A stretch of 64,000 bases of DNA from Octopus sinensis (lineage: Eukaryota), in NCBI RefSeq assembly GCF_006345805.1, contig NC_042999.1:57288001-57352000 (forward strand). Direction: 5' to 3'. Both the position numbers and the translations under genes were made by a program. Position 1 is the stretch's first letter. Each line of letters starts with the position of its first letter. This document shows, piece after piece, positions 44,851 through 44,925 of this stretch. The notes under the pieces are model-generated. The model was given only the letters and a program-made list of their open reading frames with translations. It searched no databases and was not told the DNA's origin.

Positions 44851-44925
44851 CCAGTCTTTCCTGGTGTCGATAGTCTTTCCTATTGTCCGCTCGTCTTTCC
44901 GAGCAGTCCTCTTGTCTTTCCAAGA
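44851..44925 (-). promoter_or_regulatory. Array of four GAAAGA-loop hairpins in the HERO-like 5' leader (function unknown)
   Basis: TCTTG/CAAGA, GCTCG/CGAGC, ATAG/CTAT and CCAG/CTGG stems each close GAAAGA. Confidence 0.7.

What the first reader, a model, noticed from the sequence alone, without database searches (positions are those of the whole stretch)
44851..44925. Four tandem hairpins with an invariant GAAAGA loop and fully co-varying stems in a LINE 5' leader
Seen (sense strand is minus): TCTTG-GAAAGA-CAAGA (44925-44910), GCTCG-GAAAGA-CGAGC (44904-44889), ATAG-GAAAGA-CTAT (44883-44870) and CCAG-GAAAGA-CTGG (44864-44851). Loop spacings are 19-21 nt, every loop is closed by G-C, and the linkers are GGACT, GGACA and CGACA. 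The stems differ in sequence yet all pair perfectly, so this is selected structure and not a simple tandem duplication. Inference: a multivalent protein-binding array (loosely like phage boxB loops), or an element for translation initiation, RNP assembly or internal promoter function. I do not know this feature from HERO-clade elements.
Basis: partly seen in the sequence, partly recalled or inferred. Interest (0 to 1): 0.8.

Follow-up and report, generated by a model that had tools for sequence, protein, structure and literature searches.

The report
Conserved GARAGA-loop hairpin array, LINE 5' end
The four small hairpins are real: they are what remains of a conserved, co-varying RNA hairpin cassette at the very 5' end of a family of LINE retrotransposons, and the same cassette (same loop, same linker) also occurs in bacterial tmRNAs, rRNA and tRNA leaders, phage mRNA leaders and a picorna-like virus 5' UTR, which points to an undescribed general-purpose RNA module.

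Summary
Four hairpins sit at 44925-44851 on the minus strand. Each has a GAAAGA loop closed by G-C and an NGACN linker.

The array is not a chance tandem repeat. Seven related LINE copies (25-62% protein identity) carry 4-6 such hairpins, with different stems and compensatory changes. G.U far outnumbers A.C, so the sense RNA is the folding strand.

In full-length relatives the array begins 10-25 nt from the element's 5' terminus. The window copy is dead (5'-truncated, ORF in three pieces).

A pattern scan asked only for three spaced loops. It returned the same cassette, stems and GAC linker included, in other settings:
- Acidimicrobiia tmRNAs
- Rhodobacteraceae rRNA leaders
- tRNA-gene leaders
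- phage Prp-scaffold intergenic leaders
- a picorna-like virus 5' UTR

Rfam and the paper library hold nothing on it.

Function is inferred. Most likely it is an autonomous 5'-leader RNA cassette aimed at host machinery (5'-end protection, start-site set-up or ribosome recruitment). Binding of the LINE's own protein is the main rival.

The parts
44908..44927 (-). Hairpin 1 of the window copy (equivalent to unit 2 of full-length relatives). Core is TCTTG/CAAGA at 44925-44910, loop GAAAGA at 44920-44915, closing G44921-C44914. It is followed by linker GGACU at 44909-44905.
44887..44906 (-). Hairpin 2: 7-bp stem CUGCUCG/CGAGCGG (one U.G), loop GAAAGA at 44899-44894. Followed by linker (G)GACA at 44888-44884.
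44870..44883 (-). Hairpin 3: AUAG/CUAU, loop GAAAGA at 44879-44874. Followed by linker CGACA at 44869-44865. The orthologous stem in L002/L003 is AUGG/CCAU, a compensatory change.
44851..44864 (-). Hairpin 4: CCAG/CUGG, loop GAAAGA at 44860-44855.
44818..44851 (-). Post-array long hairpin. The lower stem GCGGAGGC/GCCUCUGU is kept. The apical GGGC-UUACAA-CCC hairpin of relatives has decayed in this copy.
   Evidence: RNAalifold columns 120-153 of alignment A1, with compensatory changes
44761..44790 (-). Start region. An upstream ATG lies at 44790-44788. A conserved CCCC/GGGG-type hairpin (CUCC...GGGG here) at 44783-44761 holds in its loop the codon aligned with the ORF start of relatives: ACG at 44779-44777 here, ATG in L002.
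43463..44725 (-). ORF piece 1 (420 aa): N-terminal C2H2 zinc finger, arginine-rich stretch and the start of the RT.
43034..43414 (-). ORF piece 2 (126 aa): reverse transcriptase core (Pfam RVT_1, E = 4e-11). It is separated from pieces 1 and 3 by frame breaks.
41432..43027 (-). ORF piece 3 (531 aa): RT thumb/linker, a CCHC motif and a PD..E-type restriction-like endonuclease motif (KKPDILMW...VELTVP).
   Evidence: weak zf-RVT hit in relatives; motifs read from the translation
41240..41431 (-). 3' UTR with a conserved block (GGCCCCGAAACGG..CUAAUGACCCC..CCGGUAUACGGAGC..) and a terminal hairpin ACUUGC-AUGU-GCAAGU. The 3' end is approximate. In relatives this block sits directly upstream of the next copy's hairpin array.

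Best explanation
What it is (shown). The 75 nt are the surviving 4 units of a 5-6-unit array that forms the first ~120 nt of the sense RNA of a family of LINEs. These LINEs have RT, CCHC and restriction-like endonuclease motifs and no AP endonuclease. Each unit is a short hairpin, 5'-C-N4-5-G [GARAGA] C-N4-5-G-3'. Units are joined by one A, so the junction reads GAC. The stems drift freely but stay paired. The loop, the closing G-C and the GAC junction do not change. The window's copy is an inactive, 5'-truncated insertion.

The cassette is not LINE-specific (shown). The same unit, with the same loop and the same GAC junction, is used in Acidimicrobiia tmRNAs, in Rhodobacteraceae rRNA-operon leaders, in front of tRNA genes, in front of phage scaffold genes and in front of a picorna-like virus polyprotein.

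How it most likely works (inferred). It is an autonomous 5'-leader RNA cassette that acts on the transcript and addresses host machinery rather than the element's own protein. Three effects are proposed:
- The hairpins fold locally and independently, and purine-only loops cannot pair with one another.
- They keep the 5' end base-paired, and their redundancy lets the leader survive the loss of units by 5' truncation.
- They set up the initiation region just downstream, either by insulating it or by docking the small ribosomal subunit or an initiation factor. That would allow translation of LINE RNA that does not depend on an accessible cap.
For: Conservation and covariation:
- Arrays are present upstream of the ORF in L002-L006 (43-62% identity), L128 (35%, degenerate) and L095 (25%).
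- RNAalifold on 6 leaders shows compensatory changes at 24 of 39 pairs.
- In the 33-unit alignment, 87% of cells are paired against 60% in shuffles. The covariation score is 0.756 against 0.224 (0 of 500 shuffles), and slid controls give 21-52%.

Sense strand:
- In the core stems G.U outnumbers A.C, 9:2 in LINEs and 78:11 over all classes.
- Sense folds better than antisense in L002, L003, L006 and L095.

5'-terminal position:
- In L002 the element's own 3' UTR end abuts the array start.
- L005 and L006 carry a whole upstream copy.

Not LINE-specific:
- Scans that demanded only three spaced GGARAGAC returned tmRNAs and arrays 330-450 nt upstream of 16S or ~50 nt upstream of 23S.
- They also returned phage Prp-scaffold intergenic arrays, a picorna-like virus 5' UTR, and tRNA leaders.
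- The GAC junction, which was not asked for, is present in 138 of 160 intervals.

Link to initiation:
- The array ends ~30 nt before the ATG of the intact 1238-aa ORF of L095.
- It ends 25 nt before the viral polyprotein ATG.
- It ends ~15 nt before phage scaffold ATGs, with the Shine-Dalgarno sequence in between.
- tmRNA is itself a ribosome ligand (established knowledge).
Against: - No experiment bears on it.
- rRNA and tRNA leaders and tmRNA have no start codon behind the array. A purely translational role therefore cannot cover all contexts. This is why protection or insulation is kept in the statement.
- In the window's own subfamily, 76-100 nt and two further hairpins lie between the array and the ORF start.
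- Cap-proximal hairpins normally hinder cap-dependent scanning (established knowledge).
- The non-LINE examples were found with a pattern that required the loop, so some likeness could be convergent.
- Full invariance of six loop bases is more than stability alone usually demands, and suggests a specific ligand that I could not identify.
Confidence: 0.4

Rival explanations
1. The array is a multivalent binding platform for the LINE's own ORF protein. It would be a 5' protein-binding motif comparable in role to the 5' RNA of R2 elements, or to a retroviral packaging signal. It would secure cis-preferential RNP assembly or time second-strand steps, with redundancy buffering 5' truncation.
For: - The loop, closing pair and junction are invariant while stems vary, which is the classic signature of sequence-specific recognition of a presented loop.
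- There are 4-6 copies at the RNA 5' terminus.
- The ORF has an arginine-rich stretch and zinc-binding motifs.
- R2-type proteins are known to bind RNA from their own 5' end (established knowledge of R2).
Against: - The identical cassette, including the GAC junction, occurs in tmRNA, rRNA and tRNA leaders, phage mRNAs and an RNA virus that encode no such protein.
- The loop is unchanged between LINEs whose proteins are only 25% identical.
- Nothing here tests binding.
Confidence: 0.22
2. The array is a purely physical 5' cassette with no partner. It would be a thermodynamically favourable, 'non-sticky' hairpin spacer that blocks 5'-end-dependent decay and prevents the leader from mispairing with downstream functional RNA.
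For: - It fits every context found: 5' of start codons, 5' of mature tRNA and rRNA ends, and inside tmRNA.
- A G...A first mismatch on a G-C closing pair and purine stacking are stabilising (nearest-neighbour rules, established knowledge).
- Each unit folds alone in predictions.
Against: - It does not explain why positions 2-5 of the loop and the single-A junction are fixed across domains of life.
- Simple hairpins are weak barriers to XRN1-type enzymes (established knowledge).
Confidence: 0.15
3. The array works at the DNA level as an internal promoter made of ~20-bp monomers. Each monomer would have an initiator-like CA (in GACA) and a GGAA-type factor site, as mouse L1 uses promoter monomers.
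For: - It has a tandem ~20-bp organisation at the element's first bases.
- Non-site-specific LINEs need an internal promoter (established knowledge).
- The 5' terminus of relatives starts with a UGAC-like junction.
Against: - Arms vary yet stay complementary, which a duplex-DNA factor site does not require.
- G.U greatly outnumbers A.C, and the antisense strand folds poorly.
- The same cassette occurs in an RNA virus and inside mature tmRNA, where a Pol II promoter makes no sense.
- A dual role cannot be excluded.
Confidence: 0.08
4. The hairpins act in the first-strand cDNA (antisense DNA, loops TCTTTC), for example to prime or guide second-strand synthesis or template jumping at the 5' junction.
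For: - The array is at the very end that the reverse transcriptase reaches last.
- Copies are often head-to-tail tandems, as expected from end-to-end template jumps.
- In the window copy alone, both strands fold equally well.
Against: - Family-wide wobble pairs are G.U on the sense strand, which become C.A on the antisense strand.
- Antisense folds have z-scores near 0 in L003, L006 and L095.
- Non-retroelement contexts share the cassette.
Confidence: 0.03
5. The array is a chance or neutral tandem repeat with no selected structure.
For: TRF reports a period-19 repeat.
Against: - Shuffle and slide controls reject it.
- Orthologous compensatory changes occur across seven elements.
Confidence: 0.01

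Closest known systems
Phage lambda-type nut boxB hairpins and rRNA-operon leader boxB (N/Nus antitermination)
   Same: Both are short stems presenting a purine-rich G..A loop. Lambda boxB loops are GAAAA/GAAGA (from memory), one base shorter than GAAAGA. The cassette does occur in rRNA-operon leaders and in phage operons. The loop is invariant and the stem free.
   Different: Here the loop is a hexaloop, and there are 3-6 abutting copies with a fixed GAC junction. No boxA was looked for and no N-like protein is known. The cassette also occurs in tmRNA, an RNA virus and animal LINEs, where antitermination by bacterial RNA polymerase cannot apply.
ANTAR-regulator targets (dual hexaloop hairpins; PMC3369931)
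   Same: Both are tandem small hairpins with hexanucleotide loops, in which loop bases and apex pairs are recognised while stems co-vary.
   Different: ANTAR needs A at loop position 1 and G at position 4, and the second hairpin competes with a terminator. Here the loop is G1/A4, there are 3-6 units and no terminator. The Rfam scans of the LINE, rRNA-leader and tmRNA loci returned no ANTAR-type match. Those thresholds were E up to 1, up to 0.1 or 0.01, or gathering for the rRNA-leader loci. The phage, tRNA-leader and picorna-like loci were not scanned.
CsrB/RsmZ-type sRNAs with many GGA-loop hairpins (from memory)
   Same: Both are arrays of hairpins with an invariant loop motif and variable stems that form a multivalent platform. 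A GGA is present (closing G plus GA).
   Different: Those are bacterial sponges for CsrA. This cassette also works in eukaryotic elements that have no CsrA. Its loop and junction consensus are different, and it is a cis leader rather than a separate sRNA.
5' RNA elements of R2 retrotransposons (5' protein-binding RNA, HDV-like ribozyme; from memory and the review titles)
   Same: Both are structured RNA at the 5' end of a single-ORF, restriction-like-endonuclease LINE.
   Different: The R2 elements are a pseudoknotted fold and a self-cleaving ribozyme, not a hairpin array. No HDV-like or other ribozyme family matched.
Repeated stem-loop signals of RNA viruses and mRNAs: alphavirus packaging signal with GGG loops, MAT2A 3' UTR hairpins bound by METTL16, tandem pseudoknots of the FMDV 5' UTR (all from memory)
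   Same: All have several copies of a small structure with an invariant exposed motif and drifting stems, and work by multivalency or redundancy.
   Different: They differ in motif, position and partner. None is shared across bacteria, phages, an RNA virus and retrotransposons.

Membership tests
LINE with restriction-like endonuclease (R2/R4/NeSL/CRE/HERO group) | Reverse transcriptase domain of non-LTR type | tested here: met
   Pfam RVT_1 at E = 4e-11. Relatives match LINE-1 ORF2p and R2 protein structures at E = 1e-15 to 1e-14.
LINE with restriction-like endonuclease (R2/R4/NeSL/CRE/HERO group) | C-terminal CCHC plus PD-(D/E)XK endonuclease, and no N-terminal AP endonuclease | tested here: inconclusive
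   Motifs are visible in the translation (CKCG..H..C; KKPDILMW..VELTVP). There is a weak zf-RVT hit in relatives and no Pfam endonuclease hit of any kind. The C-terminal piece has no PDB sequence match.
HERO clade | Placement within HERO in an RT phylogeny with reference elements (HERO-1_SP, HERO-1_BF and others; PMC7650587, PMC4640811) | not testable with these tools
   No Repbase or Dfam references were available. The non-site-specific, dispersed or tandem habit is compatible with HERO.
lambda-type boxB / nut site | GNRA-like pentaloop hairpin next to a boxA, read by an N-type arginine-rich peptide with Nus factors | tested here: not met
   The loop is a hexaloop, GARAGA, in all 225 units counted. 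The element is eukaryotic. boxA and N were not searched.
ANTAR target RNA | Two hexaloop hairpins with A at loop position 1 and G at position 4, the second overlapping a terminator | tested here: not met
   Loop positions are G1 and A4, against the requirement stated in PMC3369931.
HDV-like / hammerhead self-cleaving ribozymes of retroelement 5' ends | Match to the ribozyme covariance models | tested here: not met
   Rfam scans at E up to 1 of window 40000-47000 and of L002-L006 found nothing on the leader. A CUGAUGA/GAAA pair that looked hammerhead-like proved to be part of the 3' UTR, in the wrong order and spacing.
Promoter monomer arrays of LINE 5' UTRs (mouse L1 type) | Tandem DNA monomers whose conservation is at the sequence level, with no strand-specific pairing constraint | tested here: not met
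   The tandem organisation is present. But the arms co-vary to keep pairing and use G.U on the sense strand only.
Any described RNA family (Rfam 15) | Covariance-model match over the array | tested here: not met
   There is no match on the LINE arrays. In bacteria the array lies inside tmRNA matches, or next to rRNA matches, but is not itself a family.

The most novel reading that the evidence does not exclude
The GAC-joined GARAGA-hexaloop hairpin is a universal, autonomous RNA module that engages a partner conserved in all cells. That partner is most plausibly the small ribosomal subunit or a translation factor. Evolution would have used it repeatedly as a plug-in leader or ribosome-docking cassette: in tmRNA, in stable-RNA and phage leaders, in a picorna-like virus 5' UTR and at the 5' end of animal LINEs. 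That would make it a cross-kingdom element comparable in reach to tRNA-like structures.
Probability: 0.2. Interest if true: 0.92.

Novelty: new variant of a known kind. Interest (0 to 1): 0.8.

Why it matters
For retrotransposon biology, it gives a well-defined and mutable RNA element at the exact 5' end of a poorly studied LINE group, with ready-made natural compensatory mutants. This bears on how single-ORF LINEs that are not site-specific get their RNA stabilised, translated and chosen for reverse transcription. It also bears on how they tolerate 5' truncation.

More broadly, the same loop, closing pair and junction appear in tmRNA, rRNA and tRNA leaders, phage mRNAs, an RNA virus and animal LINEs. 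That suggests a small RNA building block that has gone unnoticed: there is no Rfam family and no paper in the library searched.

If it binds a conserved partner, it would be a compact, portable leader for expression constructs in very different hosts. If it has no partner, it shows what a 'neutral but stable' RNA spacer looks like when evolution designs one.

Tried and rejected
- **Hammerhead or other ribozyme upstream of the array.** A conserved GGCCGAAA..(19 nt)..CUGAUGA block looked suggestive. Its order and spacing fit no hammerhead type, and it proved to be the element's 3' UTR, carried upstream by head-to-tail copies. Rfam was silent.
- **HDV-like ribozyme or R2-type 5' RNA.** No Rfam match.
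- **ANTAR, K-turn/K-loop and GNRA-tetraloop readings of the loop.** The loop register does not fit: G1/A4, 6 nt, no bulge.
- **m6A (DRACH) cluster.** Both GACs can read as DRACH. But G follows GAC freely, CGAC occurs, and the bacterial occurrences cannot be explained this way.
- **Shine-Dalgarno or anti-SD pairing of the loops.** At most GGAG is available, in the GAGAGA variant only.
- **Homology of the window's upstream flank (44926-45080) to the 3' UTR or to the missing first units.** None was found, so the copy is 5'-truncated rather than tandem.
- **Relatives without an array.** Aplysia (L001), Elysia (L127), L129 and Amphiura (L130) show no array upstream. L127 and L129 keep downstream leader parts and break off before the array, as truncated copies would. 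L001 and L130 are uninformative.
- **PDB sequence search with the C-terminal piece.** No hit.
- **BLAST of the phage Prp-scaffold region against annotated phages.** No match.
- **Literature searches** for GAAAGA loops or hexaloops and for tandem hairpins in non-LTR elements: nothing.

Full report
**1. The observation**

On the minus strand, 44925-44851 reads TCTTG-GAAAGA-CAAGA GGACT GCTCG-GAAAGA-CGAGC GGACA ATAG-GAAAGA-CTAT CGACA CCAG-GAAAGA-CTGG.

- GGAAAGAC occurs 9 times in the 64 kb against 1.8 expected (0 of 100 shuffles reach 9). Four of the nine lie in these 75 nt.
- Folded as RNA, the stretch gives four separate hairpins, with z = -4.7 and z = -5.4.
- TRF sees a period-19 repeat of 2.5 copies.

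**2. Surroundings**

The array lies upstream of a minus-strand LINE ORF that is broken into three pieces: 44725-43463, 43414-43034 (Pfam RVT_1) and 43027-41432.

- The protein has an N-terminal C2H2 finger.
- It has a CCHC motif and a PD..E-type endonuclease motif near the C-terminus.
- It has no AP endonuclease hit.
- The RT of a relative matches solved LINE-1 ORF2p and R2 proteins about equally.

It is therefore a LINE with a restriction-like endonuclease. HERO membership needs a phylogeny with reference elements (PMC4640811, PMC7650587), which I could not run.

Upstream of the array, 45080-45200 and 45546-46080 belong to an unrelated 184-bp tandem repeat on the plus strand.

**3. Relatives**

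A protein search with the N-terminal piece found no near-identical copy. It found many relatives at 25-62% identity in gastropods (Aplysia, Elysia, Plakobranchus), echinoderms and metagenome assemblies. I fetched DNA for ten of them.

- Five (L002-L006, 43-62% identity) carry 4-6 hairpins of the same kind in the same place.
- L128 (35%) has a degenerate array.
- L095 is a 25%-identical element with an intact 1238-aa ORF. It was found independently by the DNA pattern scan, and its array of four units, with a fifth loop upstream, ends ~30 nt before the ATG.
- Four relatives show none: L001, L127, L129 and L130. L127 and L129 keep downstream leader parts and then break off, as 5'-truncated copies do.

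**4. Covariation**

On six aligned leaders, RNAalifold predicts every hairpin. Of 39 pairs, 24 have at least one sequence with both sides changed and the pair kept, for example ATAG/CTAT in the window against ATGG/CCAT in L002 and L003.

It also finds two further conserved structures:
- a long hairpin after the array;
- a CCCC/GGGG hairpin that holds the ORF start codon in its loop.

On 33 single units:
- 87% of cells pair, against 60% in shuffles;
- the covariation score is 0.756 against 0.224 (0 of 500 shuffles reach it);
- sliding the partner by 1-3 columns drops pairing to 21-52%.

The units were picked with a mild pairing filter. An unfiltered count of all GGARAGAC loops in the arrays gives the same picture: 89 of 96 core positions paired.

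Four things never change: the closing G-C, the loop (GAAAGA 25, GAGAGA 5, GGAAGA 2), the outer C-G pair, and a single A between hairpins. Together the last two read as GAC.

**5. Which strand folds**

- In core stem positions G.U outnumbers A.C by 9 to 2 in LINEs.
- The sense strand folds far better than the antisense strand in L002 (-37.5 vs -28.4 kcal/mol), L003 (-29.2 vs -16.1), L006 (-21.3 vs -10.1) and L095 (-24.7 vs -11.2).
- Antisense z-scores are near zero in three of these four.
- Only in the window copy are the two strands equal.

The structure therefore belongs to the sense RNA.

**6. Position in the element**

A conserved block upstream of the arrays in L002-L006 first looked like a ribozyme core. 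It is the element's own 3' UTR:
- the window has it at 41346-41255;
- L002 has identical copies at its 3' end and directly upstream of its array;
- L005 and L006 have a whole upstream copy.

These elements therefore sit head-to-tail, or behind a partial 3' UTR, and the junction shows that the RNA begins 10-25 nt before the first GARAGA hairpin.

The window copy has neither the first unit(s) nor any 3'-UTR-like flank. It is 5'-truncated at about 44930 and its ORF is broken, so it is a dead copy of a family in which the array is conserved.

**7. The cassette outside LINEs**

A metagenome scan asked only for three GGARAGAC motifs 18-23 nt apart. Many hits were plain tandem repeats, but about a third had flanking stems. 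Together with scans of prokaryotic genomes and viral contigs, the hairpin-forming hits fall into five classes.

- **tmRNA genes.** These come mostly from Acidimicrobiia, with some AT-rich lineages. Three GAAAGA hairpins sit in the pseudoknot-rich 3' half (Rfam RF00023 E = 1e-30 to 1e-42; ARAGORN).
- **Rhodobacteraceae rRNA operons** (Ruegeria, Leisingera, Phaeobacter and relatives). There are 3-6 hairpins 330-450 nt upstream of 16S rRNA on the same strand. In one contig an array lies ~50 nt upstream of 23S.
- **tRNA gene leaders.** Arrays end 20-30 nt upstream of tRNA genes in AT-rich viral-like contigs.
- **Phage leaders.** About ten distinct phage arrays of 3-6 hairpins fill the gap between a Prp cysteine-protease gene (PF04327) and a scaffold-like gene beginning M..LNLRLFDGEGG. 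They end ~15 nt before the ATG.
- **A picorna-like virus.** One contig encodes an RNA helicase, a 3C protease and an RdRp. Four GAAAGA hairpins end 25 nt before the polyprotein ATG.

Features I did not ask for recur in all classes:
- 4-7-bp stems;
- a GAC junction in 138 of 160 inter-loop intervals, with GGC or GCC in nearly all the rest;
- G.U at 78 against A.C at 11.

I treat this as the same module, not a family resemblance.

**8. What is known**

- Rfam 15 has no family for it.
- Full-text searches for GAAAGA loops or hexaloops and for tandem hairpins in non-LTR elements found nothing.
- Comparative tmRNA work mentions pseudoknots replaced by helices or by tandem pseudoknots, but not this array (PMC1168896).
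- ANTAR targets are the nearest described 'tandem hexaloop hairpins', but they need A1/G4 loops (PMC3369931).
- GGAAAGAC is also 23S rRNA 2056-2063, part of the TLR13 ligand RNA15 at 2054-2068 (PMC12887398 abstract), which from memory also holds the macrolide-site A2058. I record this only as a curiosity.

**9. Mechanism**

Shown: a sense-RNA array that is 5'-terminal, redundant and under selection, built from a module also used by unrelated RNAs in bacteria, phages and an RNA virus.

Inferred: none of those other RNAs has a LINE protein. The simplest reading is that the module works by itself or with universal host machinery.

- In three independent coding contexts (L095, the virus, the phages) it stops 15-30 nt before the start codon.
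- tmRNA is a ribosome ligand.
- In stable-RNA operons the array precedes the mature 5' end.

I therefore favour a 5'-leader cassette that protects and insulates the 5' end and sets up or recruits initiation (confidence 0.4). Binding of the element's own protein is second (0.22), a partner-less structural spacer third (0.15), a DNA-level promoter fourth (0.08), a cDNA hairpin role fifth (0.03) and chance last (0.01). The remainder is for functions not thought of here.

**10. Handling note**

Before its nature was known, the L348 locus (a ~9.5-kb picorna-like contig of unknown host) was copied with other loci into a scratch FASTA for ARAGORN. That file was deleted once the Pfam result came in. 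Only ~150 nt around the array were printed.

**11. Verdict**

The interpretation as selected RNA structure in a LINE 5' leader is supported. The function is open. The element appears to be undescribed, and the module it is built from appears to be widespread and also undescribed.

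Noticed in passing
L007, L011, L030, L099, L135, L156, L167 and others (metagenome and genome loci): tmRNAs of Acidimicrobiia (Microthrixaceae, Ilumatobacteraceae, Acidimicrobiales) and some AT-rich lineages carry three abutting GAAAGA-hexaloop hairpins joined by 'GAC' in their pseudoknot-rich 3' half. I found no description of this.
   Followed up: partly
L143 5844-5893 (16S at 6220), L195 3389-3440 (16S at 3839), L136, L149, L029 254-302 (23S at 357): Rhodobacteraceae rRNA operons have 3-6 GAGAGA/GAAAGA hairpins 330-450 nt upstream of 16S rRNA. 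One contig has an array ~50 nt upstream of 23S rRNA.
   Followed up: partly
L263 11744-11861, L266, L290, L306, L313, L315, L322, L339, L028, L082: A group of phages has 3-6 of the same hairpins filling the gap between a Prp cysteine-protease gene and a scaffold-like gene. The scaffold-like product starts with the Prp-type cleavage leader (..LNLRLFDGEGG). The array ends ~15 nt before the ATG. There is no match among annotated phage genomes.
   Followed up: partly
L348 794-870: A picorna-like RNA virus contig (helicase, 3C protease, RdRp) has four GAAAGA hairpins ending 25 nt upstream of its polyprotein start codon. The host is unknown, and the rest of the contig was not read.
   Followed up: partly
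L260 (array next to 10 tRNA genes), L090 1122-1220 (between tRNA-Leu and tRNA-Met), L122: Arrays end 20-30 nt upstream of tRNA genes in AT-rich, virus-like contigs. The first two hairpins of L260 match hairpins of LINE copies L002 and L004: the first is identical over the 20 nt gacatcctgGAAAGAcagga, and the second matches L004 over 18 nt (gacagcctgGAAAGAcag).
   Followed up: no
L002 553-665 vs 4380-4492; L005 9-353; L006 17-1603: Relatives of this LINE sit head-to-tail, or behind a partial copy of their own 3' UTR, with the 3' end joined directly to the 5' hairpin array. This would be expected from end-to-end template jumping or from self-targeting.
   Followed up: partly
window 44761-44790 (minus strand): The codon aligned with the ORF start of relatives is ACG in the window, L003 and L004, and ATG only in L002. 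It sits in the loop of a conserved CCCC/GGGG hairpin. A conserved upstream ATG 11 nt before it is in another frame. This hints at unusual initiation.
   Followed up: partly
window 41240-41431 (minus strand): The 3' UTR has a block conserved with relatives at nucleotide level, and a terminal hairpin whose stem co-varies (ACUUGC/GCAAGU here, CUUGU/ACAAG in L002). It is probably the RT recognition element.
   Followed up: no
window 54627-55995 (minus strand): A second, distant fragment of a restriction-like-endonuclease LINE (30-33% identical to the C-terminal piece). No hairpin array was seen near it.
   Followed up: partly
window 45546-46080 and 45080-45200 (plus strand): A 184-bp tandem repeat (2.9 copies, 92% matches) whose unit contains a tRNA T-arm-like GAGTTCAAATTCCGCCGAAGTCGAC. 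A further partial copy abuts the LINE's 5' flank. ARAGORN calls no tRNA.
   Followed up: no
window 10908-11798 (minus strand); 38857-39753: A 296-aa ORF that looks like a Tc1/mariner-type transposase (judged by eye, not searched). A long (TA/CA)n-type microsatellite produces spurious ORFs.
   Followed up: no
all arrays: The closing pair plus loop, GGAAAGAC, is identical to 23S rRNA 2056-2063, which lies within the TLR13 ligand RNA15 at 2054-2068 (PMC12887398) and, from memory, includes the macrolide-site A2058. This may be coincidence.
   Followed up: no
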